IMG/VR virus record: IMGVR_UViG_3300010938_000950
Coordinates: 62,001 to 126,000 of that record
Strand: one strand, 5' to 3'
DNA length: 64,000 bases
Shown here: positions 28,444-44,316 of the stretch, in pieces
How positions within the stretch are numbered: position 1 is the stretch's first letter
Layout of the letters: the number at the start of each line of letters is the position of its first letter
The notes under the pieces: model-generated
What the model saw: only the letters and a program-made list of their open reading frames with translations
Told to the model about the DNA's origin: nothing
Database searches by the model: none
Position numbers and translations under genes: made by a program

Positions 28444-29235
28444 ATGGCAGATTCGTTCGAAAGCTATTTTCAGGGACTGATTAATCAAATAAAGTCCTTG
28501 TTTAGCTATAAAAAGCAACCAAGTGCTCCAGCGGTCGGGACCCCTTCGACTCCGCAAACGCAATTTATAGGGTCTCCTGGAGGCTACAAAGCGCCAATCC
28601 ACGGCCAGTGGTACAATCTTGGCGGGTTTGACTTAAGCATGGTCCGATATGACGATCCTCAAGGCGCTAAGAAGGGCCGAGGGCACAAAGGCGTAGATAT
28701 GAGCGCTTCGGCTGGAACTCCTATTTATCCAATGGCACCAGGCGTAGTTACTCAAGTTAGTACTACCAAAATTGGTGGCAATAATGTTAGTATTAAACAC
28801 GATAATACTTTATCAACTTACTACGCCCATATGGCAACAGTTAATGTTCATCCTGGAGATAAAGTAGATACAGACACCATTATTGGCACAGTTGGAAATA
28901 GTGGTAATGCTGGGGATATGGATAATCCATCAGTGACTACCGAAGGCGGTAGAACTTTTCCACATCTTCATTTTGAGGTTCATGTCGGCGGCCAAGCGGT
29001 TGATCCAGCTAGATATTTTTCTATTCCGCCTTACAACAGTGATTATGCTCGCAATCCAAAAAAGTATTTAAACTTTTGGGCTAGCGATAAAGCCAAACAA
29101 GAAGCACAAGCTTTTAATATGAAAGATCATCTTTCATCACGCAGGGTAGCCTTCTCCAGAGATATTGATGCTTTAATGAAAGTATCTTTTGAATATTATA
29201 AGCTAACTAAAAAAATTAGCGATCGACCCAAATAA
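28444..29235 (+). CDS. M23 family metallopeptidase
   Basis: HKGVD, GTPIY, YYAHM, IGTVGNSGNA, PHLHFEV, VDP. Confidence 0.92.
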   Translation: MADSFESYFQGLINQIKSLFSYKKQPSAPAVGTPSTPQTQFIGSPGGYKAPIHGQWYNLGGFDLSMVRYDDPQGAKKGRGHKGVDMSASAGTPIYPMAPGVVTQVSTTKIGGNNVSIKHDNTLSTYYAHMATVNVHPGDKVDTDTIIGTVGNSGNAGDMDNPSVTTEGGRTFPHLHFEVHVGGQAVDPARYFSIPPYNSDYARNPKKYLNFWASDKAKQEAQAFNMKDHLSSRRVAFSRDIDALMKVSFEYYKLTKKISDRPK

Positions 29236-29539
29236 GCACTATTTCAATATTTGAAAGTAGATTTCCAGTTGGTGGAATTAAATTTGGTTTGCCCACGGAG
29301 TACCAAATTTCATACTCATTAGTATTGGTATTATATCCTTGCAGTTTGTAGTATGTGTTAAATCCGGTAGTTACTAGTTGTGTAGAGTTAAGCTCTTCCG
29401 TACTCACAGTTGGCACATAAGCTGTGGTAAAAAAAGCACTATCAAATGCTTGTGTGCCGTGGCTGCCAGAGTATTGGCCTTTCCAACTCAGAAAGCTTAC
29501 CAAATTAAATATTGAGCTTTGATCAGTTACTAGCGCCAT
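29216..29539 (-). CDS. Small structural-cluster protein Z1 with YYK..Y..W module
   Basis: YYKLQGYNTNTNEYEIW...PPTGNLLSNIEIVLIW; paralog of 36324. Confidence 0.7.
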   Translation of the reverse strand: MALVTDQSSIFNLVSFLSWKGQYSGSHGTQAFDSAFFTTAYVPTVSTEELNSTQLVTTGFNTYYKLQGYNTNTNEYEIWYSVGKPNLIPPTGNLLSNIEIVLIWVDR

Positions 29540-29546
29540 AATAATA

Positions 29547-32084
29547 TCATGCGGTTAGACCGCCAGCTCCATTCCAAGTTAAGTAAATTCCATTTTGTAG
29601 ATGTAGCCAGCGGGCTGTACCGTTAACAATTCCTCCGCTTGTATATACTCCATTACCCGTTGTTCCATTAAGAGTGAAATGAGTATTATCTATAACTGTA
29701 ATTACAAAAGTGCCATTGGCAGCAGTGTTACCATTAACACCCGAAATAACAACTGTTTGACCAGTTGTTAAACTATTGGCTGCAGAAGTTGTAATTTGAA
29801 TAGGTGAAGTGTTGCTGGCGCCAGTTACCGTAAGTGTAGCAGTGTTTTCTGTACTTAGAGTAAAAGTACCAAAATTAGTTCTACCTTGTCTAATAAATGG
29901 AGCAGTACCCATTAGTCTCTGATTTAATCCATAGGCCGTAATTCCTGCGCTTGGATAAGGCAGTACTAAAGCAGGGTCAGTTGCTATACCTGCCCATATT
30001 TCCCAAGGTAATACCTCGGTGGTTCCGGTGAATGGACAATCTCCTGCGTTGGATGAATATACAGTTGATGTTCCAGAAACGCCATCAGCGTTGGCCCATC
30101 CTGCCAAGGCACACATTTCAGGAGCAAAATCTCTGTATGTAAATCCTACATTAAAATTTGCTCCCCATCTAGCCTGTATTCCGCCATAATCTCCGGTGTT
30201 ATTTCCACCGTATATAAATGGTCTATTTGAATTTGCAGGGGGCGGAGATGGTTCGTTATCTGGCAATCCAAACGTTACAAATCCGCTGGTACCACCACCT
30301 TGCGGTCTAGTATATAAAAATACTGCTTGTCCACTATCATCTCCTACAATGGTAGTACGCGGTGCAAGAGAGACGTTGGCTGTTCCAATTAACGTATTTG
30401 CGTACTGTGTTCCTAAGTTGCTGGTTAAATCTAAATATTGAGATATATGGGTGGTTGTTCCGCCAATAGAAAAATCACCAGCCGCACTACCTCCGTAGCC
30501 TACACTTATTGATGCATAAGCTGGACCACCATTGATATTCCATGGTTCACCTGCTACTCTAACTTGCCATCCACTGGAGTGCGGACTTTGAAGTATTATT
30601 CTACTATTTTGTGACACATCGCTTCCTCCAGTATAACCAATGCGAGTGACGGTGCCTCCACCCGTATAGTTTCCGTTACCAGAAGATCCGTTCAAAGTAA
30701 ATATACCAGATCCAATTCTAGTAATTGTCCATGTACCATTGGCGGCCGTATTACCGTTCACACCGGAAATTGTAACTCTTTGTCCCGTATCAAAATATGA
30801 AACAGCATTAACGCTAACGTTAATTTGAATAGGAGTAGTATTTGTTGCGCCAGTTATAGAAACACCAGTAACTCTATTATTGTCACCAAGCAACAAATAT
30901 TCTGACATTCTTGTTTCAGTTTCATATAGCCACCAACTCATACCGCTTTCAGGAGGAGGCGTATCAGTTGATCTATATTCAATAGTATAAGAATTAGTTG
31001 CAGTATTGGTAGCAGTTATTTTAAAAACACCTGAATTTTTGGTTGGATATAAATTACTTTTAAGAACTAATATTCTGCCAGTATCTCCAGTTGTAGGTGC
31101 TGTGCCGTTCACAACTGTTCTCGTAGCAGTAGGAATTTGTACCGCATAAACGGAGGGCGCGCCACCAAAATTTATACTAGCTCCCGTTCCAGATGCCACT
31201 AGTAAGCCTTGTGGTAAAATTGAACACGAATTAGCAACATAAGCTCCAGCTAATGTTGTCCAGAGTAGTCTCATTTGTGTTGAGCTAATAACTTCTACTT
31301 TACTTGGACCAAAATTTCCAAGGTTGCTGCTAATACCGTACATACCAGTTCCACTACCAGATTGAATAGCGGTATAATCTCCAGTATTCATTCCGTGAGG
31401 GAATTGAGTTGTGATAGTAACAGGGTTGCCAGTAGCGGTGACAATTCTATTTGGACCACAAGCAACACCACCAACGCCAGCAGACGAAACATTATTACCA
31501 GTGTTCATTGTGCCAGTTCCACCAGTACAACCTGTAAAACTAGTTCCAGTAGTACCAGTGTAAGTGACTGTTTGTACGCCTGCAGTTGTTATGACATAAA
31601 TTGTTCCAGAAGTCGGAAATCCCGCCGTAGAAACAACGTTAATTGTTGCCGTAGGCAATGCAACGTTATTGGAACCTGCAGCAATAGTTGTTGTAAAGCC
31701 AGAAGACATTGTGCCAGTTCCGCCTGTACAATTAGTAAAGGTAGTAGCGGTAGTTCCAGAATATTTAACTATCTGTACACCATCACTAGTAGTTACGTAA
31801 ATAGTTCCAGAGGCTGGAAATCCTGTAGTTGAAGTTACGTTAATAGTTGCTTGGGGTAAAATCTGACCGTTGGAACCAGCCGCAATCGATGTGTTTTGAG
31901 ATATTGTAAAAGATTGGTTATTAGAATTGTTTAAATCAAATCCGGTGTGTCCTACAACAGAGTATCCTAATATCTTATTCAAAAATACAGCAGTATTAAA
32001 TAAATAAGATACGTGTGCAAAACTTGAAGCGCTCGTGTATCCGCTGGTAGAAGCTGTGAAATCTCGTAGTATATGAACTGTCAT
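29547..32084 (-). CDS. Virion-type scaffold X protein carrying 2 A and 3 B modules
   Basis: Shares H.LRD, GR.LVL.S, RIILQSP.S.GWQVR, GRTNFG, H...G.Y..W.G with 34036 and 36836. Confidence 0.75.
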   Translation of the reverse strand: MTVHILRDFTASTSGYTSASSFAHVSYLFNTAVFLNKILGYSVVGHTGFDLNNSNNQSFTISQNTSIAAGSNGQILPQATINVTSTTGFPASGTIYVTTSDGVQIVKYSGTTATTFTNCTGGTGTMSSGFTTTIAAGSNNVALPTATINVVSTAGFPTSGTIYVITTAGVQTVTYTGTTGTSFTGCTGGTGTMNTGNNVSSAGVGGVACGPNRIVTATGNPVTITTQFPHGMNTGDYTAIQSGSGTGMYGISSNLGNFGPSKVEVISSTQMRLLWTTLAGAYVANSCSILPQGLLVASGTGASINFGGAPSVYAVQIPTATRTVVNGTAPTTGDTGRILVLKSNLYPTKNSGVFKITATNTATNSYTIEYRSTDTPPPESGMSWWLYETETRMSEYLLLGDNNRVTGVSITGATNTTPIQINVSVNAVSYFDTGQRVTISGVNGNTAANGTWTITRIGSGIFTLNGSSGNGNYTGGGTVTRIGYTGGSDVSQNSRIILQSPHSSGWQVRVAGEPWNINGGPAYASISVGYGGSAAGDFSIGGTTTHISQYLDLTSNLGTQYANTLIGTANVSLAPRTTIVGDDSGQAVFLYTRPQGGGTSGFVTFGLPDNEPSPPPANSNRPFIYGGNNTGDYGGIQARWGANFNVGFTYRDFAPEMCALAGWANADGVSGTSTVYSSNAGDCPFTGTTEVLPWEIWAGIATDPALVLPYPSAGITAYGLNQRLMGTAPFIRQGRTNFGTFTLSTENTATLTVTGASNTSPIQITTSAANSLTTGQTVVISGVNGNTAANGTFVITVIDNTHFTLNGTTGNGVYTSGGIVNGTARWLHLQNGIYLTWNGAGGLTA

Positions 32085-34028
32085 TTAAGCTCCACTCGCA
32101 AGGAAATTGTATGGCAGTATTGCCCCATCCCATGGAAGACATATACCATTAACTAAGTGAATAAATTCACCACTATTGCCAATTAAGAAAAATGATGGCA
32201 ATCCTCCAAACGTAAGCCTAAATGGTCGCATTTTAGCTCTGGCAAATGAAAATTGTCCAGCAGTTGATGAAACTGACATTATGGCTTCTCCAGTCACAAC
32301 CTGTGCCAAACTTTTTTGAAATCCTAGTAATGAGTTTAAATTAAAACCCACAGTGTACGTAGGGCCTACAGTGGCATTAGCAGTATCACCAACTAAATTT
32401 CTACTAAGTAATTGGTGTGACCTGGTTATTCCATCAAACCCTGTCATTCCAAACGATGTACAAAAAGAATCAGTTCCAGTGCTGTTATTAAGAGCATTAC
32501 CTCCTACTAAAACTGCTATTAAATTTGGATCCTGAGTTTGTGAATATAATCTTAGAGGTGTGGTGGCCATAAAATAAAGTGCTGATGAACTATTTGTAGG
32601 AGATTTAACATGGGCAAAAATAAAATCAGTATCTGCAACTATAGATACAAACCCATTTGCACTAGCAGTTGTACCTGTAATACTACCAGTTCCGTTTGTT
32701 CTTTCGGTCATTGTGGCATTTGATCCAGAACCGGAAAATGCACTTCCATTCCAGCTACCATTTGGAGATCCAACTACTCCGAATAATCCGAAAGCATTTG
32801 CTGCACCTCTAAGTATAAATTGGAATTGTGATGGTACTGCACCAGGATTTATATTAGGGGCGCCAGTAAATGTACCAATAAAATAATTACCATTTGCTAT
32901 CGACAGTTGTGAAGCTGCCGTAACATCAATTACACGATAACTGAGAGAGGCTCTAGCAGTTAAATTATTCTTCAAAGTAGAGATATCAGTAGTTCCTCCA
33001 CTGAATGGTACAATCTTTACCTGGTCACTAGATGGTACTGCAATAATTCTATAAATGGAATCATCAGTACTAGGAGGATTAGTTGAAACTGATCCATTAG
33101 GCGATAGAGTGCCGGTTCCACCAGTGCAACCAGTAAATATCTGCCCAGTAACAGAATTGCCAGTTGTTAAAGTACCAGAACCACCTGAACATCCAGTAAA
33201 GCTCGTAGCTGTAATACCCGTATAAGTAACTATTTGTTGTACGTTTGAAGAGGTAGTGACATTAATAGTTCCAGATGTTGGGAAGCCTGTTGTAGAAGCT
33301 ACGTTGATAGTTGCTTGTGGCAATACTTGTCCGTTCGATGCGGCAGAAATTACGGTATTAATTATTCCAGTATAGTTAACAGTTTGTAGTCCACTACTGC
33401 TTAATATAAACAAAGTTCCGCTACTAGGAAATCCTACGGTAGATTGTACAGATATAGTGGCTTGTGGTAATGTCAAACCTGCGGATGCTGGGGCAATTCC
33501 ACTTCTAGGTCCAGCCAACCAAACAACTACGTGTTTTCCAATCATAGATTGAGAAAATGGTTGTGAAGAGGCGGCAGTTAGTGAGTCTCCAATTGCAGAA
33601 GTTACTCCATCATTTCCAACAGCAAGTACGGACGAGCCCTCAAAAAATCCAGTCGGACCACTTGTGGGTGATATTGGTATTCCACCGGGGACAGTGACTT
33701 GTCCACCACTCACATAGTTGGCGTTTCCTGTAGCGCCATTTAGAGCAAATTGTGTAGAATTAACAACAGTAACATTCCATCCACCATTAGCGGCGGTATT
33801 GCCCTGAACACCGTAGACTCCAACTAACTGGTTATTAGATAGTCCATGTGGAGTAGAGGTGGTAATTACGATCGGATTAGCATTGGATGCAGCCGTAACT
33901 GTAAGTATCGGTCTAGTACCATTTACACAATAGGACCAGAACTCGTAGCACAATTTCATAAAAATAGGTACATCCCTACCATTTGTGCCAGTTGTATATT
34001 GTAATCCTCTGAGAAATTTGATGGCCAT
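32085..34028 (-). CDS. Virion-type scaffold Y protein carrying 1 B and 2 nested A modules
   Basis: FLRGL.Y, YEFW.YCVNG, EG..VLA.GNDG, DSIY shared with 38606. Confidence 0.75.
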   Translation of the reverse strand: MAIKFLRGLQYTTGTNGRDVPIFMKLCYEFWSYCVNGTRPILTVTAASNANPIVITTSTPHGLSNNQLVGVYGVQGNTAANGGWNVTVVNSTQFALNGATGNANYVSGGQVTVPGGIPISPTSGPTGFFEGSSVLAVGNDGVTSAIGDSLTAASSQPFSQSMIGKHVVVWLAGPRSGIAPASAGLTLPQATISVQSTVGFPSSGTLFILSSSGLQTVNYTGIINTVISAASNGQVLPQATINVASTTGFPTSGTINVTTSSNVQQIVTYTGITATSFTGCSGGSGTLTTGNSVTGQIFTGCTGGTGTLSPNGSVSTNPPSTDDSIYRIIAVPSSDQVKIVPFSGGTTDISTLKNNLTARASLSYRVIDVTAASQLSIANGNYFIGTFTGAPNINPGAVPSQFQFILRGAANAFGLFGVVGSPNGSWNGSAFSGSGSNATMTERTNGTGSITGTTASANGFVSIVADTDFIFAHVKSPTNSSSALYFMATTPLRLYSQTQDPNLIAVLVGGNALNNSTGTDSFCTSFGMTGFDGITRSHQLLSRNLVGDTANATVGPTYTVGFNLNSLLGFQKSLAQVVTGEAIMSVSSTAGQFSFARAKMRPFRLTFGGLPSFFLIGNSGEFIHLVNGICLPWDGAILPYNFLASGA

Positions 34029-34035
34029 ATTTTCC

Positions 34036-36315
34036 TTAAGGTACTAGTGGGGGCCCGCCCCAAAAAATATACATTCCCCTTCGCATATGCTGAAAAGAAC
34101 GATTAGTATCGTGTGTTAACGTATATTCTCCAAAATTAGTTCTTCCTTCCCTTATATGCGGAATAGTTCCTATAAATCTTGCTTCTGTATTTGGAAAACC
34201 TACCCCACCTCCCCAATCGTTAACAGTGCCCCCTATCACATCTACAGATAATAATTCAGTTGCTCCTAACCAAGGATTATCTCCTGCGCTTCCATCAAAC
34301 ATAGGACTTCCGCCTTGCCCTACTCCGGAAACATACGTTAATAGAGATACTCCCGCTGATATTGGAACAGGGGTGGTAGTATTTTCATTTGCTTGCATAC
34401 TAACACCCTGGGAACGATTATTAATAGTAGTTGAAGTACCAAAAAGCCAACTACCATCATTTAAACTATTACCACTGCTTGATCCTAATCCACTTCCTAT
34501 ACAGTATAGTCGCGCTTCGTTATTCGCTGGAATTAGTGGCGGCTCAACTTCTGGCATACCAAATGATACATAAAATGATTTGGGATCGGTTGCATTTCCT
34601 GGCCTACGCCCAAACATTGTAACACCTAATCCATATCCATCATCTCCAATTATAGTATGTCTATATGAAATTGATGTTAGTGTACTAGTGTCTCCGCAAC
34701 CGGGAGCGCCACCAATATAAATGCTACTGTTACTATTATAATATAGTGGCGTATGTAAATGTCTACCAGCTACTGGAAAATCTCCGGCCGCATCACCACC
34801 AAATCCTGGTATGAAGGTAATTGGTGCACAGTTGCTTTGATCTGTATTTGTTTCATTGCAAATTCTAACCTGCCATCCAGTAGAGTTTGGGCTTTGTAAA
34901 ATTACACGTGGTGTAGTAGAATTACCATTGCCCCTGTACGACCCCGAAGGACTACTATTTACTGCTCCATTAGCTGGGGCATTAGCATCGCTGGCATATA
35001 AATACCAATTCATACTATCTGTAGGCTCAATTGGCGGCAAACTTGGAGAGTAGAAAACAGCTCCGCCAGTACTCATAACACCAGTACCGCCTGTACATCC
35101 TGTAAATGTAGTTGCCGTAATTCCAGTATATGATACTTGCTGTACGCCTGCTGCTGTGGTTACGAAGACAGTTCCAGATGGTGCAAATCCGGCACGGACA
35201 GCACCGCCAGTGGTCATTAATCCAGTACCGCCCGTACATCCTGTAAATGTAGTTGCGGTAGTTCCTGTATATGATACTGTTTGAGTGCCAGTGCTAGTGG
35301 TAACAAAAATAATACCAGTAGTAGGAAATCCAGTAGTTGAAACTACGTTAATAGTGCCTTGTGGTAATCTAACGTTATTGGATCCTGAAGCAATAGTTGT
35401 ACTTGCTGTATTTGTAGAAGCCACGTTAATGGTGGCCTGAGGTAAAGATTGTCCGTTAGAACCGGCGGCAATTGTGGTAGCTACTCCTGCTACAACCTGT
35501 GAACCACCAAGTATACTTCCGCTGCCTCCTGTACATCCTGTAAATGAGGTTGCAGTTGTACCGGTATAATTAACTGTTTGCCTGCCTGCTGGAGAGCATA
35601 TAAATATAGTTCCGCTCGTAGCAAATCCAGTAGTAGAAGTGACGTTAAGTGTAGCTGTAGGTAATGAGATACTAGCTATAACAGAGTTACCAGTAGACAT
35701 AGTGCCAGTACCTCCAGTACAACCTGTAAAAGTAGAGCCTGTAGTACCAGTATATGTAACTGTTTGTGTTCCAGCATTTGTAGCAACTAAAATGGTTCCA
35801 GATGTTGGGAAACCAGAAGTCGAGGCTACGTTAATGGTTCCTGTTGGTAAGGAAACGTTATTGGAAGCAGCGGCAATTGTGGTTGTACCACTAAGAAATG
35901 TACCAGTTCTATAGTTTATACGATAAGAGTTTGTGCTTGTATCATATCCATCAATAAGAAAACAACCAGAATTATATTGTGGATTAGTTGTGCTTCTTAA
36001 AACTAATAATCTGCCAACATCAACTTGACTAACTACTCTAGTGGCGACTGGAATAGAAACAAAGAACTCTTTTCCTGAACTTAAATTAATGCCAGCCCTA
36101 GTTCCTGCTGCGAAAGTTGGTGTGGCGGCTGTAGGAGTAGAGTCCGCTGTTGAAATTAATAAAGTACCAACTGAATTAATATTAAAATTAGTATCACCTA
36201 CATAAGTGTAAAGCAAAACTCTACGCAAAAAAATAGCCATTAAATAGGAAGGTATCCATTTCCTATTTGTACTAGTATCTTGTATTACGTAGTCTCTGAG
36301 TAAATGTCTTGCCAT
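34036..36315 (-). CDS. Virion-type scaffold X protein carrying 4 A modules (one nested)
   Basis: Close paralog of 36836 outside the inserts. Confidence 0.75.
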   Translation of the reverse strand: MARHLLRDYVIQDTSTNRKWIPSYLMAIFLRRVLLYTYVGDTNFNINSVGTLLISTADSTPTAATPTFAAGTRAGINLSSGKEFFVSIPVATRVVSQVDVGRLLVLRSTTNPQYNSGCFLIDGYDTSTNSYRINYRTGTFLSGTTTIAAASNNVSLPTGTINVASTSGFPTSGTILVATNAGTQTVTYTGTTGSTFTGCTGGTGTMSTGNSVIASISLPTATLNVTSTTGFATSGTIFICSPAGRQTVNYTGTTATSFTGCTGGSGSILGGSQVVAGVATTIAAGSNGQSLPQATINVASTNTASTTIASGSNNVRLPQGTINVVSTTGFPTTGIIFVTTSTGTQTVSYTGTTATTFTGCTGGTGLMTTGGAVRAGFAPSGTVFVTTAAGVQQVSYTGITATTFTGCTGGTGVMSTGGAVFYSPSLPPIEPTDSMNWYLYASDANAPANGAVNSSPSGSYRGNGNSTTPRVILQSPNSTGWQVRICNETNTDQSNCAPITFIPGFGGDAAGDFPVAGRHLHTPLYYNSNSSIYIGGAPGCGDTSTLTSISYRHTIIGDDGYGLGVTMFGRRPGNATDPKSFYVSFGMPEVEPPLIPANNEARLYCIGSGLGSSSGNSLNDGSWLFGTSTTINNRSQGVSMQANENTTTPVPISAGVSLLTYVSGVGQGGSPMFDGSAGDNPWLGATELLSVDVIGGTVNDWGGGVGFPNTEARFIGTIPHIREGRTNFGEYTLTHDTNRSFQHMRRGMYIFWGGPPLVP

Positions 36316-36323
36316 ATTTTACC

Positions 36324-36839
36324 TTATTGAATCCATCGTCCAACTATTTTAATATCTATTAATGGATTTCCAGATGGTGGAGTGTAGAAAATTCCTAAAT
36401 CTACATTTGGTGGGCTGCTGTTTGGGTTAATCGGCAAGCTACCAGGAGTATTAAATAATTCTGGTCGTGGCACTATATTTTCTGCAATTACCCAAGTTTC
36501 ATACGAACTAGTATTTGGGTTGTATCCGGATACTTTATAGTAGATAGTTTGATCCTTAGGATGTGTCAAAATGGGGTTATTATCTACTTGTATAGATTGT
36601 GGCGCCAGAATTGGCCTGGTATCAAAATTAGTAGTAATTCCATTGTATACTTGATCTCCGGCAGATCCTATAATGTTGTTTACATTGACGGCATCATAGT
36701 TGCTAGCTAAACCACCATAATCTTGCAAAGATGATCCTCTCGCCAGATCAAAATCGGCACTGGCAAAAGTATTGGCTTGTCCACCAAAATTTTCACTAGA
36801 TCCAAAGTTGGTAATTGTTAAATCAAAAGCATAGCTCAT
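36324..36839 (-). CDS. Structural-cluster protein Z2 with YYK..Y..W module
   Basis: YYKVSGYNPNTSSYETW...PPSGNPLIDIKIVGRW; start moved to ATG 36839 (ATGA overlap). Confidence 0.7.
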   Translation of the reverse strand: MSYAFDLTITNFGSSENFGGQANTFASADFDLARGSSLQDYGGLASNYDAVNVNNIIGSAGDQVYNGITTNFDTRPILAPQSIQVDNNPILTHPKDQTIYYKVSGYNPNTSSYETWVIAENIVPRPELFNTPGSLPINPNSSPPNVDLGIFYTPPSGNPLIDIKIVGRWIQ

Positions 36840-38596
36840 GGTATTGTTTGTGGTCCATTCCAAGTAACGTAAACTCCTCGCTTTAAATGCATCCAACTAT
36901 GGTTGGCTTCGGTTGTTATCGAGAAGTTTCCAAAGTTTGATCTTCCTGCTCTTAAATGTGGTATTGTTCCTAGTATTCTGGGTTCTAGTGGCATTGAAGC
37001 TTCAATGCCTGCATTTCCATTCCAAGTGTTAAATGTACCAGCTATTAAATCTACAGAGAATAATTCTGTACTTAAACTCCATGGACTATCTGCTGCACTA
37101 CCATCAAATATTGGACTTCCAAATTGTCCAACACCGGATACATAAGTCCATAGGGACGGTGCACAACTACAAATAATTCCTCCTTGAGTTTGTGTTACTC
37201 CTTGCAGAAACGGGTTATGATTTGCATCACCAAAGCTACCAGCATAAATAATTCCAGGAGTCCAGGTAATATCATTTAGATTATCACCAAATCCGTTATT
37301 TCCTCCCGTGCTAAGACTGCTGCCTAGAACAAATAATCTTGCTACATTATTAACTGGTAATGGCAGTGGTTCATTTTCTGCTAAACCGAATGACGCAATA
37401 TAATTTTTTGGTCTTCCAGCATTGGATGGGTCTCGCCAGAAGCGGCTAAAAATAACTACACCCTGCCCAGTGTCGTCTCCAACTAGTGTTATTCTAAATT
37501 GCATCTGTTGATATTGTGATGGACTGTATGGAATACCGAATGATCCGGAATCGTCCCCAAATCCAGGAGCCATTCCTACATATTTAGTGGTGTTATTTGT
37601 GTTGTACCATAATGGACCATGCAGGTGCGGGCCTGCAACAGCAAAATCACCTGCTGAATTGCCGCCAAATCCTGGTATAGCTGTGATTAAAGGAACATTT
37701 CCATAATTACCATTGGTTTGAATATTTTGACTATAATCAGCAAAAGTCTCATGGCATAATCTTACTTGCCAACCCAATGAGTGTGGACTTTGTAAAATTA
37801 TACGCGGTGTAGTGGAGTTACCATAACCGCCATATGTACCATTGTTAACGCCCACCCAAGTACTATTTGGCGCACCTGATGTTGGAGTTAAAGTTTCAGC
37901 AGCATATAGATACCAGTTCATGCTATCGTATGGTTCAACAGGTGGATATCCCGTAGCCCCCATTGTTCTGTAGTCAATTATGTAACAGTTTGTTACTACA
38001 GTTCCTCCGCCAGCATATGCTCCATTACCCGTTGTTCCATTGAGCGTAAATTGCGTATTATTTAATACAGTAATGGTAAAAGTTCCATTAGCATTCGTGT
38101 TTCCAGTAACTCCCGAAATAGTTACTGTTTGTCCTGTAGTTAGGGCATGTGGTGCTGTAGTTGTTACCTGTATCGGGGAAACAGCATTGCCTGAGGTGGT
38201 AGACACACTATAGTTAAGCGCTTCAAAACCAGTAATTAAAAATATACCAGAATTGAATGTAGAGTTGGCTGTACTTCTTAATACCAGCAACCTGCCTACG
38301 TCAGAAAAACTAACAGTCCTTACTGAAGGAGGAACCCATACATAAAATTCTCTTCCGGTACCTTGATTAATACCAGCTTTAGTACCCACTGCGAAAGTTG
38401 GAGATCCTGTAGGCGTAGAGTCTGGAGTAGCAATTAACAAAGTTCCTACAGCGTTGATAGGATAGTTTGTATCACCAACATAACTATACAAAAGTATTCT
38501 TCTTAAAAAGATACTCATGAGATAGCCTGGTACCCACTGCCTACTAGCCGTAGTGATATTTTGAGTAACATAATCTCTAACTGTGTGTATAGCCAT
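36836..38596 (-). CDS. Virion-type scaffold X protein carrying 1 B module
   Basis: Paralog of 34036 and 29547. Confidence 0.75.
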   Translation of the reverse strand: MAIHTVRDYVTQNITTASRQWVPGYLMSIFLRRILLYSYVGDTNYPINAVGTLLIATPDSTPTGSPTFAVGTKAGINQGTGREFYVWVPPSVRTVSFSDVGRLLVLRSTANSTFNSGIFLITGFEALNYSVSTTSGNAVSPIQVTTTAPHALTTGQTVTISGVTGNTNANGTFTITVLNNTQFTLNGTTGNGAYAGGGTVVTNCYIIDYRTMGATGYPPVEPYDSMNWYLYAAETLTPTSGAPNSTWVGVNNGTYGGYGNSTTPRIILQSPHSLGWQVRLCHETFADYSQNIQTNGNYGNVPLITAIPGFGGNSAGDFAVAGPHLHGPLWYNTNNTTKYVGMAPGFGDDSGSFGIPYSPSQYQQMQFRITLVGDDTGQGVVIFSRFWRDPSNAGRPKNYIASFGLAENEPLPLPVNNVARLFVLGSSLSTGGNNGFGDNLNDITWTPGIIYAGSFGDANHNPFLQGVTQTQGGIICSCAPSLWTYVSGVGQFGSPIFDGSAADSPWSLSTELFSVDLIAGTFNTWNGNAGIEASMPLEPRILGTIPHLRAGRSNFGNFSITTEANHSWMHLKRGVYVTWNGPQTIP

Positions 38597-38605
38597 ATCG
38601 ATTCC

Positions 38606-41600
38606 TTATATAATGTAGAACAAGCTAGATGGAAGTATTGTATTATCCCAAATAATGGCAATACCATTTTGAGTATTTAAGAATTGGCCAGTTGCTGTAC
38701 CAAATCTGTGATAGAGTGGCAAGGTAGTTCCTGTAAACTTTAATGTTCTTAATTTAACTCTACCCAAAGAATATTGTCCGGTTACTCCTGGTAGTGATAA
38801 TACACCATCTGAAGCTAGTACTGTACCTCTTGTAGTATTAAATGTTAATCTAATATCAGTTAAGTTAGACCCAAATGTTGGAGTACCATCTCCGCCTAGT
38901 GACTTAGCAAGCATTCTATAAGTTCTTATGGTGCCAGTTGTATCTTTCATAACGAATCCATTACCGATAGTTCCGCTGTTACCGCTAGTTCCGTCGCATC
39001 TAAATACTGAACCGTTAAATACTCCACCTCTACTTAATACTGCCACAGGATTTGTATCAGCGGCTTGAGTATAAAGTCTTATTGGAATTTCACAATGTAG
39101 ATACGAGGATGCATCACCACTGTTTACATCTTTGAAATGCATCCAGAAAAATGCAGGATCGGCAGCCATAGTCATAGCCATAGTGTTTGCTGGAATACCG
39201 TTGAAAATACCTCCACTTTGACTAGTAAACTGTGTTGTAGCATCTGTTTGAGGATCTCCTGTTACTGGGAAAGTAAGTCCATTCCAGTTGCCGCCTGGTG
39301 ATATAATGGTTCCAATAGTACCCGCAGTATCGTTGCCAAATAACTGTATTTGACTATTGGCTTGCCCTGGATTTATTCCAATGGATGAAGGATTGAACTG
39401 CATAACCATATAGTTACCGTTACCGCTACTGAATGTTTGAGCAAGACCAGCATCTACTATTCTGTAATTAATATTACTTCTTTGAGTAAATGACGGGTGC
39501 AAATTAGTTGGGTCTGGTGTTCCGCCAGTATTCAAATTAATTCTGATAGAATTTGGACTATTTACGGCTGTAATTATGTAAATACTATCTTCTGTAGTTC
39601 CAGAATTTGGCTTCCACATAATCAATAGCTTACCTACCATATTGCTAGTTGTAACAGTTTGAGTGCCGCCACTTGTCCATGAGCCGTTTGGAGTAGAGTT
39701 GTTTAATATAATACTATTACGATTGGCAATTGAGCCACCGCTGGTATAAGCACCACTAGCAATTGTACCATTTAGTGTTGCAACTCTATTACTAATTACT
39801 GTTGTTAATGCTGTAGTGTTAGCGTTTGGTAAACCATTAATACCAGATGTTATTACAGTTTGTCCAGTTAATAGTGTATGGAAATCAGATGTAGTAATGG
39901 TAATTGGTGACAGTATAGTATTACCAGTAGTCATAGCTCCGGTACCGCCAGAACATCCTGTAAATGTTGTGGCAGTAGTTCCTGTGTAGGATACAATTTG
40001 GTTTCCGGTACTGGTCATAATTGTAAATGAACCAGTTTGTGCAAAACTAATAAACACAGGATTACCTGTAGTCATAGTTCCGGTGCCGCCAGAACATCCT
40101 GTAAAAGAAGTGCCCGTGGTACCAGTATACGTTACAGGTTGATATCCGGTAGTTGTTAATACATATATGTAACCGCTAGTTGGGAAACCTGTAGTTGAAG
40201 CTACGTTAATAGTAGCTTGTGGCAGTACTTGTCCACTGGATGCGACTGCAATTGAAGTGTAATTGCTAGCTGGAGAGAAGGCTGTGAACACCGATCCGCC
40301 AGCAGAAGTGCTTCCCGTACCACCTGAGCATCCAGTTAGTGATGTGGCACTTACGCCAGTATAATTTATTAGTTGAGAACCGGCTGAGGTAGTAATGTAC
40401 AATGAACCGGCAGTTGGAAAATTAGTAAAAAATCCAGTGTTATTTACTGTGTTGCCAGTAAACATAGTTCCGAATCCGCCCAATGCACCAGTGAAGGAAG
40501 TGCCGGTTACACCAGTATAGGTAACTGTTTGATTGAATGGTCCGCCGCCAATTGGAATACCAATCAACAGAGTACCAGTTCCGCCCGTACATCCTGTAAA
40601 TGAAGTTGAAGTTAGTCCCGTATAAGAAACCGAAGTGGCCGCATAAACAACACCACCAGTTGACATGGTTCCACCACCACCAGAACATCCAGTGAAGGAA
40701 GTTCCTGTGGTACCCGTGTATGTGACTATCTGTGCACCAGAGCTTGTTGTTACATAAATAGTTCCAGAAGCCGCAAATCCTACTGTCGAGGCTACGTTAA
40801 TAGTGCCTTGTGGTAATGCCTGTCCGTTGGAGCCGGCAGCGATAGTTGTTTGAATAGAGTTGTCTGCTACACTGAGAGTTCCGCTAGTTGGAAATCCATT
40901 AGTAGTAGATACATTAATAGTTGATTGAGGTAATGATTGACCACTAGATCCTAGTGCAATACTAGTTACTACTGTAGTGGCAATATTTAATGTACCTGTC
41001 GTTGGAAATCCGGTAGTTGAAACTACGTTAATCGTACCGGTTGGCAATGCGATATTGTTAGATCCTGATGCAATGGTCGTACTTGCCGTTGCTGTGGCGG
41101 CTACGTTGATTGTAGCTGTTGGTAATGCTTGAATGCCAGTAGTGGTTGTGAAAGGTGCAGCAGTATTTGCATTAACAGTTGCCTGTGGCAAAGATGCTCC
41201 ATTCGATGGAAAACCAGTTGTGGTATTAAAGTATGTTGCATTGGAAATATTGTTAGTTGGGGTGGTAATTATCCAAGTTCCATTGGCAGTTGTATTTCCA
41301 GTGACGCCACTTACTACAACAGATCCTAAATTAGAATAAGAGTTCGCGGCCGTCATATTAACTGATATTGGTGCAGTTACTGCCCCACCAGTTGACATAG
41401 TGCCAGTACCACCAGAGCAACCAGTAAAGGTTGTTCCTGTAATACCGGTATAAGTAACTGTTTGTACACCACCGCTAGTCGTAACGTTAATTGTTCCACT
41501 GCTTGGGAATCCGATGGTGACAGTACCACCAGTTTGCATGGAACCACGTCCTAGAGTACATCCAGTAAAAGTAGTGGCCGTAATACCTGTGTACAGCACT

Positions 41601-42373
41601 TGTTGGATGCCTTCAGTAGTTTGTACATTTAAATATCCACCAGAAGGAAAACCAGTAGTGGATGCTACGTTGATAGTACCAGTAGGTAGTGAAACGTTGT
41701 TAGAAGAGGCTGCGATGGTTGTGCTAGCGGTTGTAGTAGAAGCAACGTTTATGGTAGCCTGAGGTAAAGATTGTCCGTTAGATCCCGCAGCAATAGTAGT
41801 TCTGTAATTAGAAACATTGTTAATTGTAAAGCTAGTAGCGGCACTTGTAAATGGATTGACATTGGTTGCACTGAAAACAGCATCCCCACTGACAGACGTA
41901 CTAACCTGAGCAGCAGTGTATCCATCATTTCCGATTGCTAAAACAGGGGTTCCTTCTGTAAAATTAACTGGCCATGCGAATGGGGTAGTATTAATGACAC
42001 CGCCGCCAGTATACGATCCATTTCCAGTTGATCCGTTTAAGCTAAATGTGGTTGTAGAAGTAACTGTAATTTGAAAAGTTCCGTTAGCGGCCAAATTTCC
42101 TAATACTCCAGAAATTGTAACTTGTTGTCCAGTAAATAGTGCGTGAGTTGTTGTAGTAGTAATAACGATTGGAGATACGCCAGCGCCTGTGGTATTTGAT
42201 ACGTTGTATGAAATGCTCATGGTGTTTGCAAATCCACCAGGCGTTTGCAAGCCGGTTCCACCATTAACGCAGTATCCCCAGAACTCATAGAGTACTTTTA
42301 AGAACTCGGAGGCTCTTCCAGTTTGGTTATAATTGTAAAATAGTCCTCGACAGAACCTTAGTGAAGTTGGCAT
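38606..42373 (-). CDS. Virion-type scaffold Y protein with a ~730-aa nested insert (8 A and 3 B modules in total)
   Basis: Paralog of 32085; see findings. Confidence 0.75.
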   Translation of the reverse strand: MPTSLRFCRGLFYNYNQTGRASEFLKVLYEFWGYCVNGGTGLQTPGGFANTMSISYNVSNTTGAGVSPIVITTTTTHALFTGQQVTISGVLGNLAANGTFQITVTSTTTFSLNGSTGNGSYTGGGVINTTPFAWPVNFTEGTPVLAIGNDGYTAAQVSTSVSGDAVFSATNVNPFTSAATSFTINNVSNYRTTIAAGSNGQSLPQATINVASTTTASTTIAASSNNVSLPTGTINVASTTGFPSGGYLNVQTTEGIQQVLYTGITATTFTGCTLGRGSMQTGGTVTIGFPSSGTINVTTSGGVQTVTYTGITGTTFTGCSGGTGTMSTGGAVTAPISVNMTAANSYSNLGSVVVSGVTGNTTANGTWIITTPTNNISNATYFNTTTGFPSNGASLPQATVNANTAAPFTTTTGIQALPTATINVAATATASTTIASGSNNIALPTGTINVVSTTGFPTTGTLNIATTVVTSIALGSSGQSLPQSTINVSTTNGFPTSGTLSVADNSIQTTIAAGSNGQALPQGTINVASTVGFAASGTIYVTTSSGAQIVTYTGTTGTSFTGCSGGGGTMSTGGVVYAATSVSYTGLTSTSFTGCTGGTGTLLIGIPIGGGPFNQTVTYTGVTGTSFTGALGGFGTMFTGNTVNNTGFFTNFPTAGSLYITTSAGSQLINYTGVSATSLTGCSGGTGSTSAGGSVFTAFSPASNYTSIAVASSGQVLPQATINVASTTGFPTSGYIYVLTTTGYQPVTYTGTTGTSFTGCSGGTGTMTTGNPVFISFAQTGSFTIMTSTGNQIVSYTGTTATTFTGCSGGTGAMTTGNTILSPITITTSDFHTLLTGQTVITSGINGLPNANTTALTTVISNRVATLNGTIASGAYTSGGSIANRNSIILNNSTPNGSWTSGGTQTVTTSNMVGKLLIMWKPNSGTTEDSIYIITAVNSPNSIRINLNTGGTPDPTNLHPSFTQRSNINYRIVDAGLAQTFSSGNGNYMVMQFNPSSIGINPGQANSQIQLFGNDTAGTIGTIISPGGNWNGLTFPVTGDPQTDATTQFTSQSGGIFNGIPANTMAMTMAADPAFFWMHFKDVNSGDASSYLHCEIPIRLYTQAADTNPVAVLSRGGVFNGSVFRCDGTSGNSGTIGNGFVMKDTTGTIRTYRMLAKSLGGDGTPTFGSNLTDIRLTFNTTRGTVLASDGVLSLPGVTGQYSLGRVKLRTLKFTGTTLPLYHRFGTATGQFLNTQNGIAIIWDNTILPSSLFYII

Positions 42374-42393
42374 TTATTCTCCGTTTAACCAAA

Positions 42394-42406
42394 ATGTCGT
42401 ATTATT
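42394..42406 (-). promoter_or_regulatory. Candidate phage promoter motif
   Basis: Minus strand aataa tacg acat, 20 nt before the start at 42373. Confidence 0.45.
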
Positions 42407-42412
42407 GCGTGT

Positions 42413-43372
42413 TTATGCGAACCAAGTGTCTAAGACCTCTGGAGTAGAATAAGGCCCTATACACGGGAAAGCTGGCGCATTTGCTAAAGAAATTTCTGTG
42501 TCTACCCAAACAACCGGAGTAGGAGTTGTACAGGAAGTATCATAAGCTCTTAATTTATAATATCTCACGGCGCTGGTAACTGTGATTGGTAAAACCCCAA
42601 CTTTGTACACTAATTTAAAATAATCCAGAGGTCTTGCAATATCCGCGACTCTAATATCTTGAATTAAAATATTTGGTTCTTCTTTATTGGCTGATCCTGT
42701 AGCTGTAATTGCACCAGTTCTCCAAAATCCAAAACCATTAACACCGTCGGTATACGATAAGGATGCTGCTGCTACAGAATTTAATTGTGTACTTCCAGAA
42801 TATCTAATACATTGAAATCCATTTAAATAGGCACGCAAATCTGTGCCATCGTGTGTTAATCCTATATGCGACCACTGCTGCAGGGGTATCGGAAAATCGG
42901 TAACTGTGAATGTAGCATTGGTACTCGAAGTTAAAGCAACTTGTGCTATCCAGTCTTGGCCACCGTTAGATGTAAGTGTAGAAATATTAATAGCTTGAAA
43001 GGGGCTCGTCCAACTTGAAGTAATTGTACTATCTCTATATTCTTTTCCAAATAATGTTGTATTATTTGTAGTAGTATAAGATTTTAAATATACCCAAGCC
43101 GACACAGTTAATGGCGGCGTAGGATTAATAGTTTTAGCGCCAGCCGCGTAATTTCTAGTGGCTGAGGCGCCGGTCGGAAAATTTCCTGTGCTAGGAAACT
43201 GCGCACAAGAGTCATCAAAAACGCCAGTTCCAGTCCTTACTATGGTATTAGTAATATTTAAATCTGTACTTACATCATTAGGTGAAGTGACGCCGGTATT
43301 TCTATACGGACCAGAACTTTCGTTAAGTCTCCACACTAAAATATCATGTTCGTCTGGTGTTACTCTACCCAT
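42413..43372 (-). CDS. LamG/concanavalin-A-like domain protein with C-terminal YYKLRAYDT module
   Basis: TVSAWVY, WSHIGLTHDG..LRAYLNG, IQDIRV. Confidence 0.8.
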   Translation of the reverse strand: MGRVTPDEHDILVWRLNESSGPYRNTGVTSPNDVSTDLNITNTIVRTGTGVFDDSCAQFPSTGNFPTGASATRNYAAGAKTINPTPPLTVSAWVYLKSYTTTNNTTLFGKEYRDSTITSSWTSPFQAINISTLTSNGGQDWIAQVALTSSTNATFTVTDFPIPLQQWSHIGLTHDGTDLRAYLNGFQCIRYSGSTQLNSVAAASLSYTDGVNGFGFWRTGAITATGSANKEEPNILIQDIRVADIARPLDYFKLVYKVGVLPITVTSAVRYYKLRAYDTSCTTPTPVVWVDTEISLANAPAFPCIGPYSTPEVLDTWFA

Positions 43373-43374
43373 GA

Positions 43375-44316
43375 TTAAAATCCTAACTTAGTCCAAGATT
43401 GCACTATTTCTATCGGCCCCAAACTACCACCACATGGAGGAGATGGTGCACCGTTGTAGTTTATTCCATTAGATACCCAATAAACTGGAGGAGAATTTGA
43501 ACAAGTTGTATCATATGCTCTTAATTTATAATATTGAGATAGTGGATTTGAACCTGTACCTGGGGATAACACTCCGTTTCTGTATACATTTTGAAAATAT
43601 GATTGTGGTCTAGCTACATTAGCAATTCTAATATCACATATTGAACATACTGGTTCTTCTGGATTTCCTGAGCCGGCTGGTATGGCACCTACGAACCATG
43701 GACCTGGAGTAGTGCCGTAGTTTATATTTCCGCTAGCTGTACCTGTAGCGACTATACTTCCATTAATATAGCCTATCTGAGTGGCACCATCATATGTTAG
43801 TCCAACATGTGTCCAATTATATAAAGAAATTGTGTTTTCAGCAGATACCGTACCTGCACCGCCAGATGCCGTAACAAAAAATAAGTCCCAGGCTGACGAT
43901 TGTGAGGTATATGTTCTATTTTGTAATCCCAATGCTCCAAATGTACTAGACCAGTTTCCGGTATTCATTTGTTTCATGAACGGATGCTGTGTAAATCCTG
44001 TAGTATTGTAGGCTCGCAAATAAATCCAAAAAGATATGGTAATAGGGGCTTGTAGCGTAAAATTATTAGCACCAGCAATAAAATTGCGAGGGCTGCTGCT
44101 ATTAGATCCTGTGAACTGTACACAACTGTTATTACCAGATGCAGCAAATAGACTCGGCTGTTGTAATAAGACTGTTCCTGATAACGTAGCTAAATCAGAA
44201 ACGGCATGTGAAGGGGCTGATGGAGAAGTAGAAGAATTTACAAACGGAGCTGCCGCTTCGTCTAATTTCCACACAACAAGATCATTATTATCTGGTTCTA
44301 TTCTAGTTCCTGACAT
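43375..44316 (-). CDS. LamG/concanavalin-A-like domain protein with C-terminal YYKLRAYDT module
   Basis: TISFWIY, WTHVGLTYDG...YING, ICDIRI. Confidence 0.8.
   Translation of the reverse strand: MSGTRIEPDNNDLVVWKLDEAAAPFVNSSTSPSAPSHAVSDLATLSGTVLLQQPSLFAASGNNSCVQFTGSNSSSPRNFIAGANNFTLQAPITISFWIYLRAYNTTGFTQHPFMKQMNTGNWSSTFGALGLQNRTYTSQSSAWDLFFVTASGGAGTVSAENTISLYNWTHVGLTYDGATQIGYINGSIVATGTASGNINYGTTPGPWFVGAIPAGSGNPEEPVCSICDIRIANVARPQSYFQNVYRNGVLSPGTGSNPLSQYYKLRAYDTTCSNSPPVYWVSNGINYNGAPSPPCGGSLGPIEIVQSWTKLGF

What the first reader, a model, noticed from the sequence alone, without database searches (positions are those of the whole stretch)
33081..33503. Independent A-inside-A insertion at a different loop
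Seen: in 32085 the outer A is split between YTGII and QIFTGCTGG by a complete A (~33144-33359). Elsewhere A is split after INVAST (34036, 38606), after GTL.(I/V)A (38606) and probably before its last strand (29547). At least three or four loops of A accept a copy of A, which argues against simple unequal crossing-over, since that gives tandem copies.
Basis: partly seen in the sequence, partly recalled or inferred. Interest (0 to 1): 0.7.

Follow-up and report, generated by a model that had tools for sequence, protein, structure and literature searches.

The report
Self-nested domains in phage fibre proteins
A small 70-residue barrel domain on the tail-fibre proteins of a huge phage is repeatedly found plugged, whole, into surface loops of another copy of itself (up to four or five levels deep), a rare "Russian-doll" way of building proteins that here can be followed step by step among related phages.

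Summary
In the minus-strand gene 32085-34028, a profile of domain A matches three pieces. These are an N-part (profile 3-51, window 33360-33500), a complete copy (1-70, 33147-33359) and a C-part (48-69, 33087-33146).

Orthologues from independent metagenomes form a series: no A, one uninterrupted A at this site, or the same A interrupted by one contiguous block of about 72 residues. So this is an insertion, not a tandem array.

A is predicted with high confidence (pLDDT 96.8) as a six-strand small barrel of a fold common in phage tail proteins. The three split points seen in the window (profile 24/25, 36-42, 50-52) all fall in predicted loops.

Gene 38606 holds a 4-5-level nest. Cut into two chains, its halves are predicted to interlock level by level (score 0.78, best control 0.00). 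Nest depth differs between close relatives and changes at least 6 times on a 24-tip tree. Clean nests with different junctions occur across a family of about 2,600 representative proteins.

The closest known analogue is the recursive HABAS-in-HABAS insertion of cyanobacterial RNA polymerase Si3. The DNA mechanism and the function of A remain inferred.

The parts
32085..34028 (-). Gene for a 647-aa fibre-forming virion protein: one core domain carrying loop-inserted B (E1_FCCH-like) and A-inside-A.
   Evidence: ORF. 461 homologues. AF2 model pLDDT 82.7. The core matches JBD30 baseplate/tail-fibre chain 8rk3_K at Z 17.1, 265 of 317 residues.
33360..33500 (-). Outer A, N-part (residues 177-223; profile 3-51; predicted strands b1-b3).
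   Evidence: Strands 191-194, 204-210 and 213-219.
33147..33359 (-). Inner, complete A (residues 224-294; profile 1-70), inserted in the b3-b4 loop of the outer A.
   Evidence: A-alone model pLDDT 96.8.
33087..33146 (-). Outer A, C-part (residues 295-314; profile 48-69; strands b4-b5).
33693..33866 (-). B domain (PF16190 E1_FCCH-like, residues 55-112), also a loop insert in the core.
   Evidence: E 1.5e-5. VIA Z 12-13 to the Uba6/Uba1 FCCH domain. Absent in the 425-437-aa orthologues.
35056..35478 (-). Nest in gene 34036: outer N 35410-35478, inner full A 35197-35403, outer C 35056-35196 (split at profile 24/25).
41375..41800 (-). First nest in gene 38606: outer N 41729-41800, inner full A 41516-41728, outer C 41375-41515 (split at 24/25).
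39914..41227 (-). Deep nest in gene 38606. L0-N 41147-41227 (weak match). L1-N 41090-41146. L2-N 40973-41089. L3-N 40862-40972. L4 full 40646-40861. L3-C 40556-40645. L2-C 40445-40555. L1-C 40289-40444. A second full A 40055-40288. L0-C 39914-40054.
   Evidence: Two-chain prediction scores 0.78 against best control 0.00, with level-by-level contacts.
31488..31895 (-). Two complete A copies in plain tandem in gene 29547. This is not a nest.
   Evidence: residues 64-131 = profile 1-68 and 131-199 = profile 1-69.

Best explanation
A is an autonomous six-strand small beta-barrel of about 69 residues that decorates the tail-fibre and baseplate proteins of a clade of huge phages (contigs up to about 490-500 kb). 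Its first and last strands lie side by side, so a whole A can be plugged into a surface loop of a host domain and the chain returns to where it left.

In gene 32085-34028 the order of events was as follows. The core first gained one A in a hairpin. Later a second, canonical A, most likely copied from another fibre gene, was inserted as one in-frame block of about 72 codons. It landed in the b3-b4 loop of the resident A, between YTG and FTGC. The two halves of the resident A still fold together around the guest.

The same process at the b1-b2 loop and the b2-b3 hairpin turn, applied repeatedly, built the 4-5-level nest in gene 38606.

Shown here:
- the three-piece sequence topology;
- the contiguous indel relative to un-nested orthologues;
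- split points in predicted loops;
- many different junctions across the family.

Predicted only:
- the halves refold in cis;
- the chain termini of A are adjacent.

Inferred:
- At the DNA level, insertion is by illegitimate or template-switch recombination of a whole repeat unit. Selection then keeps only in-frame, whole-domain, in-loop products.
- Alleles of different depth are shuffled by homologous recombination between co-infecting relatives.
- Nesting serves to stack more exposed, probably ligand-binding, modules outward from a subunit whose two chain ends must both stay in the core.
For: Topology.

Natural series at this site: no A (425-514 aa), one uninterrupted A (565-592 aa), nested A (643-673 aa).

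Core tree, A and B columns removed. The A-bearing rows form one side of a branch (98*). All nested rows lie in one 32-row clade (100*), with the single-A protein P0029 basal. The junction Y(T/S)GI | xNTxI ... xVTG | QIFTGC is conserved in all nested rows, which points to one origin.

A second, more recent case. P0123 (the window protein) and P0124/P0126 are 85-88% identical in the C-terminal core domain. They differ by one contiguous block of about 71 residues, a whole A, sitting in the TDAG hairpin turn.

Structure. A alone has pLDDT 96.8 with strands at model residues 3-6, 19-22, 32-37, 43-48, 55-57 and 71-74. The split points fall in the loops 23-31, 38-42 and 52-54. In the full-length model the nest region has pLDDT 74-93, and the outer halves show the same strands as the inner copy.

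Two-chain test of the deep nest. ipSAE 0.78 (three runs 0.77-0.79) against best control 0.00. The mark was reached by 51 of 78 solved complexes and 2 of 108 mismatched pairs. The runs share at least 91% of contacts and the partner pLDDT is at least 77. Contacts pair L3-N with L3-C, L2-N with L2-C, L1 with L1 and L0 with L0. The first strand of L3 (470-472) touches its last strand (602-608).

Complementarity: 123 of 141 N/C pairs, against a shuffled maximum of 68.

Origin of the guest. The inner copies keep 98.6% of the canonical signature residues. These include N9 (100%), T65 (100%) and G66 (96%). The outer halves show 0%, 26% and 0% at those positions, like the single-A orthologues (14%, 50%, 30%). 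Mean identity is 66% inner-to-other-A and 53% inner-to-outer.

Generality. 2,602 representative proteins match at E<=1e-3. Of the 144 newly returned proteins among the 150 best representatives, 56 contain partial pieces. Clean N-F-C nests occur at profile 24-30, 34-40 and 48-52, with unrelated linkers of 0-22 residues.
Against: All structural support comes from predictions (AF2, ESMFold2). I could not inspect coordinates, and such networks may favour completing familiar folds.

AU tests on the 66-column A alignment reject none of the groupings tried: outer+single, inner+outer, inner+single. The foreign origin of the guest therefore rests on signature positions and mean identities only. Gene conversion could mimic those.

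The core tree places five single-A orthologues inside the nested clade. This needs either two precise losses, or allele exchange by recombination, or repeated gains.

DNA identity among A copies is only 56-75%. No flanking direct repeat is visible at the P0123/P0124 junction. So nothing identifies the mutational mechanism.

No function of A has been tested.
Confidence: 0.85

Rival explanations
1. Two successive partial tandem duplications within one resident A. First profile 1-51 is duplicated, then 48-69. This gives the same linear order N-part, full copy, C-part without any insertion.
For: The linear order 1-51 | 1-69 | 48-69 is formally what two such duplications would give. AU tests cannot reject inner and outer forming one clade (p 0.46).
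Against: It predicts that the inner copy shares the resident A's site-specific states. It does not: N9 is 100% against 0%, and G66 is 96% against 0%. It needs an intermediate (N-part plus full copy) that none of 79 orthologues shows. It gives no reason for complementary, mirror-ordered end points across 123 of 141 pairs. For the deep nest it would need six matched events. The P0123/P0124 difference is one contiguous whole-domain block.
Confidence: 0.05
2. Nests arise from ordinary tandem arrays (A-A-A) by deletions. Selection for foldability then enforces complementary remnants. The nest would be a decay product, not an insertion.
For: Tandem arrays of A exist in the same proteins (29547, 34036, 49979). 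Some proteins carry unmatched C pieces (18 of 159), so partial copies can persist.
Against: No tandem array is seen at the 32085 site in any of 79 orthologues. The states there are none, one or nested. The size difference between states is exactly one domain (about 72 residues). The single-A state is basal to the nested clade. Each nest would need two matched deletions.
Confidence: 0.05
3. The split pieces do not refold in cis. They complement pieces of neighbouring subunits, or swap strands with the guest copy, in an oligomeric fibre. This would be as reported for some recursively inserted HABAS domains of RNA polymerase Si3.
For: Domain-swapped recursion is documented in Si3 (PMC11515920). 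The structural homologues of the core, JBD30 gp47/gp48, work as stacked heterodimers (PMC11445458). I had no coordinates with which to exclude swapping.
Against: Monomer AF2 gives high confidence through the nest. The two-chain test pairs each N-piece with its own C-piece, with expected errors under 1 A. The outer halves keep the barrel's core signature (LP, G30, Y45, FTGC, GG.G, V69 at 88-100%).
Confidence: 0.05

Closest known systems
Recursive HABAS (sandwich-barrel hybrid motif) insertions in the Si3 region of cyanobacterial RNA polymerase beta' (PMC11515920; a 6-level nest is described in PMC13114784)
   Same: A small beta domain is inserted into loops of copies of its own fold, several levels deep. 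Some hosts carry more than one guest. Lineages differ in the number of copies.
   Different: The fold and family differ: the Foldseek hits for A are phage tail domains and ATPase N-terminal barrels, with no RNA polymerase hit. Here the hosts are virion fibre proteins of phages. Three different loops are used. Depth differs between relatives that are 85-88% identical in the core. There are many junction variants across about 2,600 representatives.
Generic A1-B-A2 domain-insertion architectures (about 20% of multidomain proteins; PMC13114784)
   Same: The host is discontinuous and the guest continuous. The guest is inserted in a loop and has adjacent termini.
   Different: Here the guest and host belong to the same sequence family, and the insertion is recursive. 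I did not check in that survey how often a family hosts itself. It describes deeply nested architectures as a minority.
Tail-fibre-forming proteins gp47/gp48 of Pseudomonas phage JBD30 (PDB 8rk3; PMC11445458)
   Same: The core of the 32085 product (both chain ends) superposes on chain 8rk3_K at Z 17.1 over 265 of 317 residues. The window encodes two alternating paralogous families, as JBD30 has two similar-fold subunits.
   Different: By the alignment, the JBD30 chain corresponds to the core only (317 residues against 647). The A and B decorations lie outside it. Heterodimer stacking was not tested here.
Loop-inserted decoration or carbohydrate-binding modules in phage tail proteins (for example extra domains on tail tube, Dit and Tal proteins). 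This comparison is from my own knowledge.
   Same: Small beta modules are plugged into loops of structural tail proteins. The A fold matches such extra domains: 9n71_A (phage Mystique tail tube) at TM 0.73, and tail-fibre and tip-attachment-protein-J models at TM 0.76-0.83.
   Different: Those are heterologous single insertions, not self-nesting.

Membership tests
Recursive homotypic domain insertion (architecture class, as in RNAP Si3) | The host domain is interrupted in sequence by one contiguous complete guest domain. | tested here: met
   HMM coordinates 3-51 | 1-70 | 48-69. A contiguous 72-residue indel separates it from the single-A orthologues.
Recursive homotypic domain insertion (architecture class, as in RNAP Si3) | Guest and host are homologous. 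| tested here: met
   All three pieces match one profile. The outer halves keep 79% of the signature residues.
Recursive homotypic domain insertion (architecture class, as in RNAP Si3) | The insertion points lie in loops, and the host halves refold as one domain. | tested here: met
   By prediction only. The loops are at model residues 23-31, 38-42 and 52-54. Interlocking scores 0.78 against best control 0.00. There is no experimental structure.
Recursive homotypic domain insertion (architecture class, as in RNAP Si3) | A guest can itself be a host (depth above 1). | tested here: met
   Gene 38606: N24 [N37 [N36 F C42] C41] C24 inside a probable further level.
HABAS / sandwich-barrel hybrid motif family | A has the HABAS fold or sequence. 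| tested here: not met
   Foldseek against PDB, AFDB clusters and the ESM Atlas lists no RNA polymerase or HABAS hit. There is no Pfam hit over A.
Tandem repeat array made by unequal crossing-over | Complete copies lie head to tail, with copy number varying by whole in-register units. | tested here: not met
   At 33087-33500 the first and last pieces are complementary partial copies. Gene 29547 does meet this definition.
PF16190 E1_FCCH-like domain | Profile match over the repeat in question. | tested here: not met
   PF16190 matches the separate B domain (residues 55-112), not A.
NHL / PknD-type beta-propeller blade | The repeats assemble as blades of a propeller. | tested here: not met
   The A profile (positions 6-42) matches the designed Pizza6 propellers at E 2e-7, and natural PknD only at E 0.06. 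A is modelled at pLDDT 96.8 as a six-strand domain whose best structural matches (TM 0.75-0.88) are domains of phage tail proteins, not propellers.
JBD30 gp47/gp48-like tail-fibre-forming subunit (the core of the protein) | Shared core fold. | tested here: met
   VIA Z 17.1, rmsd 4.5 A, 265 of 317 residues, model range 4-634.
JBD30 gp47/gp48-like tail-fibre-forming subunit (the core of the protein) | Forms heterodimers that stack into a fibre on the baseplate. | not tested
   The only lead is the alternation of two paralogous families in the locus.

The most novel reading that the evidence does not exclude
A is a self-insertable plug-in module, and nest depth is a fast-evolving, selected trait of huge-phage fibres. 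Depth changes at least 6 times among 24 close relatives, and there are dozens of independent junctions across the family. The nests would be produced by a biased DNA-level process that copies whole repeat units into loops. They would be used to tune the reach or avidity of receptor binding. That would be a mode of host-range diversification distinct from domain swapping, tandem expansion or diversity-generating retroelements.
Probability: 0.25. Interest if true: 0.8.

Novelty: new member of a known kind. Interest (0 to 1): 0.62.

Why it matters
Domain insertion is common, but a domain repeatedly inserted into copies of itself is documented mainly for RNA polymerase Si3, an ancient and fixed case.

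Here the same architecture occurs in a fast-evolving viral protein with the intermediate states still alive. At one site there is no A, one A and A-in-A. At another there are depths 1, 2 and 3. That makes several questions directly testable:
- which loops tolerate insertion;
- what nesting costs in stability;
- how an interrupted domain folds around its guest;
- how nested architectures arise at the DNA level.

For phage biology it defines an unannotated decoration domain with no Pfam match and about 2,600 representative proteins. It also shows how fibre subunits whose two chain ends are locked in one core can still grow outward.

For protein engineering, A offers a natural scaffold with three proven insertion-tolerant loops.

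Tried and rejected
- Megablast of 29000-43000 against GenBank phages found no match.
- PHROGs on the five fibre proteins gave only one unnamed family, on 34036.
- Pfam gave nothing over A.
- A tree of 79 A sequences with AU tests, meant to decide the origin of the inner copy, had too few columns. Every grouping was accepted. I fell back on diagnostic positions.
- Pairwise DNA identity of A copies and a repeat search, meant to find a recent donor, showed only old copies at 56-75%.
- I compared the DNA junctions of the window with the contigs of P0124 and P0126, looking for microhomology or a target-site duplication. I saw none. MAFFT at the DNA level mis-paired the single copy with the inner copy, and I corrected this by motif-anchored comparison. 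In that comparison the C-part looked closer to the inner copy. I attribute this to attraction towards the consensus, because the rare 'IG...GGPF' tail is shared with the shell.
- The sequence match to Pizza/PknD propellers was considered and rejected as fold evidence.
- Foldseek with the whole 647-residue model found only the B domain. VIA-align was needed to recognise the core.
- Four literature searches for nested self-insertion in phage tail proteins found nothing specific.

Full report
**Setting.** The window is bases 62001-126000 of a 209,766-bp viral record that is estimated to be about half complete. Orthologues of its proteins sit on contigs of about 470-500 kb. The window also carries ribonucleotide reductase, helicases, PhoH and a PhuZ-like tubulin. 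So this is a huge phage.

Bases 29547-42373 hold five back-to-back minus-strand genes. They are flanked by three LamG-like genes, an M23 peptidase, a protein matching a PHROG of virion structural proteins, and one with a weak baseplate-protein match. Their products fall into two paralogous families by their N- and C-termini.

For the 32085 product, VIA-align superposes the core, formed by both ends of the chain, on a chain of the phage JBD30 baseplate/tail-fibre complex (8rk3_K, Z 17.1, 265 of 317 residues). In JBD30 the lateral fibres are stacks of gp47/gp48 heterodimers of similar fold (PMC11445458). I did not establish which protein chain K is. I therefore treat these genes as probable fibre-forming subunits. 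That is an inference from fold and context.

**The observation.** I built an HMM from 11 uninterrupted A copies in the window. On the 32085 product it finds residues 177-225 = profile 3-51, 224-294 = profile 1-70 and 293-314 = profile 48-69. In window coordinates these are 33360-33500, 33147-33359 and 33087-33146.

The same HMM confirms the nests at profile 24/25 in 34036 and 38606. It also resolves 38606 residues 383-820 as a balanced bracket expression: N31 [N24 [N37 [N36 F C42] C41] C24] F C25. That is four certain levels plus a probable outermost one, whose N-part is a weak match (9.9 bits).

Gene 29547 holds two complete tandem copies, not a split copy. No Pfam family covers A. The other repeat, B, is PF16190 E1_FCCH-like.

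**Insertion or tandem duplication?** A search of 5.8 billion proteins returned 461 homologues of the 32085 product. Those covering the core fall into length classes, and the HMM explains each class:
- 425-437 aa: neither A nor B.
- 500-514 aa: B only.
- 565-592 aa: one uninterrupted A between the KH..W strand and the STDDS.Y strand.
- 643-673 aa: the same A interrupted by a complete A.

The nested and single forms differ by one contiguous block of about 72 residues. All nested forms share the junctions Y(T/S)GI | xNTxI and xVTG | QIFTGC. No orthologue shows a tandem pair or a lone partial copy at this site.

I built a tree on the core with the A and B columns removed. The A-bearing proteins form one side of a branch (98*). 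All nested proteins lie in one clade (100*), with a single-A protein basal. So single is ancestral and nested is derived. Five single-A proteins lie inside the nested clade. This requires either two clean losses or, more simply for phages, allele exchange by homologous recombination in the flanks.

**Where did the guest come from?** AU tests on the short A alignment cannot discriminate, but diagnostic positions can. The canonical residues N9, T65 and G66 are present in 96-100% of inner copies and 90-100% of A copies in other proteins. In the outer halves they are present in 0%, 26% and 0%, and in the single-A orthologues in 14%, 50% and 30%. Mean identity agrees: inner to other A is 66%, inner to its own host is 53%.

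Hence the outer pieces are the resident A, and the guest is a canonical A from elsewhere. This contradicts in-situ partial duplications, barring later gene conversion.

**Structure.**
- A alone, with a 103-sequence alignment, is modelled at pLDDT 96.8. Strands are at model residues 3-6, 19-22, 32-37, 43-48, 55-57 and 71-74 (model residue = profile position + 2).
- The three split points fall in the loops 23-31, 38-42 and 52-54.
- In the full-length model (pLDDT 82.7) the nest region scores 74-93, and the outer halves show the same strand pattern as the inner copy. The last outer strand before the guest runs on into the guest's first strand. The guest's last strand runs on into the next outer strand. 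This suggests a two-stranded connector.
- The fold is a small barrel that recurs in phage tail proteins. AFDB cluster hits reach TM 0.75-0.83 in 'tail fiber' and 'tip attachment protein J' proteins. ESM Atlas hits reach TM 0.81-0.88, mostly viral clusters, some carrying SU10 adaptor, Baseplate_wedge or Phage_Wedge1 families. The PDB hits are weak: extra domains of tail proteins and the N-terminal barrel of F1/V1 ATPases.

**Do the halves refold?** I cut the deep nest of 38606 after its innermost complete copy and submitted residues 383-576 and 577-822 as two chains.
- The score was 0.78 (three runs 0.77-0.79) against a best control of 0.00.
- That mark was reached by 51 of 78 solved complexes and 2 of 108 mismatched pairs.
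- The runs agree in at least 91% of contacts, and the partner pLDDT is at least 77.
- The confident contacts pair each N-piece with its own C-piece: 486-502 with 581-595, 461-468 with 615-635, 415-426 with 652-697, and 399-411 with 785-807.
- The first strand of a level touches its last strand (470-472 with 602-608), so the termini of A are adjacent.

This is a model's confidence, not a measurement.

**Generality and turnover.**
- Across 145 proteins, the pieces parse into 141 N/C pairs. Of these, 123 are complementary within 6 profile positions, against a shuffled mean of 50 and maximum of 68. The rows are not independent.
- Orthologues of 38606 show depth 1 (P0066), 2 (P0124 and P0126 among others) or 3 (the window protein, P0125 and P0127 among others) below L1. 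The second guest in L0 is plain in some and itself nested in others.
- On a tree of the C-terminal core, depth changes at least 6 times and the second-guest state at least 4 times among 24 tips.
- The window protein and its nearest relative (88% identical in the core) differ by one contiguous whole A set into the TDAG hairpin turn. No flanking repeat is visible.
- A profile search of 1.84 billion representatives finds 2,602 proteins at E<=1e-3. Among the top hits, clean nests occur at profile 24-30, 34-40 and 48-52. They have unrelated linkers of 0-22 residues and different exact positions, so there were many independent events and there is no site-specific motif.

**Mechanism.** The A copies in the window are only 56-75% identical in DNA, so the events are old and no donor or junction signature survives.

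My best inference has two parts. First, illegitimate or template-switch insertion of a whole repeat unit, filtered by selection for in-frame, whole-domain, in-loop products. Second, recombinational shuffling of alleles between related phages.

Homologous recombination between copies inside a nest would leave unbalanced remnants. Few are seen: 5 unmatched N-pieces and 18 unmatched C-pieces, some of them from truncated proteins.

On function, both ends of these subunits belong to one core, so added modules must return the chain to where it left. Nesting does that automatically and stacks modules outward. Ligand binding by A is a guess from its relatives.

**Comparison with what is known.** Domain insertion as such is common. 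Recursive insertion of one fold into itself is documented for the HABAS domains of cyanobacterial RNA polymerase Si3 (PMC11515920, PMC13114784). A is not a HABAS domain. The present case is therefore a new member of that architectural kind.

It is notable for three permissive loops, for the surviving intermediates and for rapid change of depth. I found no description of it for phage tail proteins in the library searched.

**Verdict.** Confidence that this is whole-domain insertion is 0.85. The DNA mechanism and the function remain open.

Noticed in passing
window 33693-33866 (B in 32085); also 38606 residues 71-128 and 29547 residues 762-821: The E1_FCCH-like B domain is itself a loop insert whose presence varies. 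Orthologues of 425-437 aa lack it. P0044 and P0045 carry a second B in a different core loop.
   Followed up: partly
window 41228-41374 (38606 residues 334-382): Between the two nests lies a short B-like remnant (motif 'SGVTGNTTANGTW') that looks like a truncated E1_FCCH-like copy. I did not analyse it.
   Followed up: no
A profile positions 6-42, e.g. window 33234-33344: The A profile matches the blades of the designed Pizza6 beta-propellers (E 2e-7, 5 stretches) and natural PknD weakly (E 0.06). Pfam gives a weak TEN_NHL hit on 32085. This may be an ancient shared hairpin motif or convergence. The predicted fold of A is not a propeller.
   Followed up: partly
window 35080-35136 versus 35221-35277: A 57-nt stretch is 91% identical between the outer C-part and the inner copy of the 34036 nest. 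The copies are otherwise 56-75% identical. Local gene conversion between host and guest is possible.
   Followed up: no
window 29547-42373: Two paralogous subunit families alternate: 38606 and 32085 against 36836, 34036 and 29547. All end in a similar H..G.....W.G motif. This recalls the gp47/gp48 pair of JBD30 fibres (PMC11445458).
   Followed up: partly
window 42413-45038: Three consecutive paralogous LamG (Laminin_G_3) genes lie directly upstream of the fibre genes. The same neighbour is present on the related contigs L009 and L011.
   Followed up: no
window 4997-6355: A 452-aa protein has a weak PhuZ-like tubulin match (phrog_4733, E 2e-8) in this huge phage.
   Followed up: no
window 46534-49482 and 49979-54673; genome C1:22981-24081: Further A copies, all uninterrupted, sit in two large plus-strand proteins of 982 and 1564 aa and in a 367-aa ORF outside the window. 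The 982-aa protein also matches an antifreeze-type beta-roll (PF21300).
   Followed up: partly
window 36324-36896: A 190-aa TTG-start ORF overlaps the end of gene 36836 by 60 nt. Its true start and whether it is a real gene were not examined.
   Followed up: no
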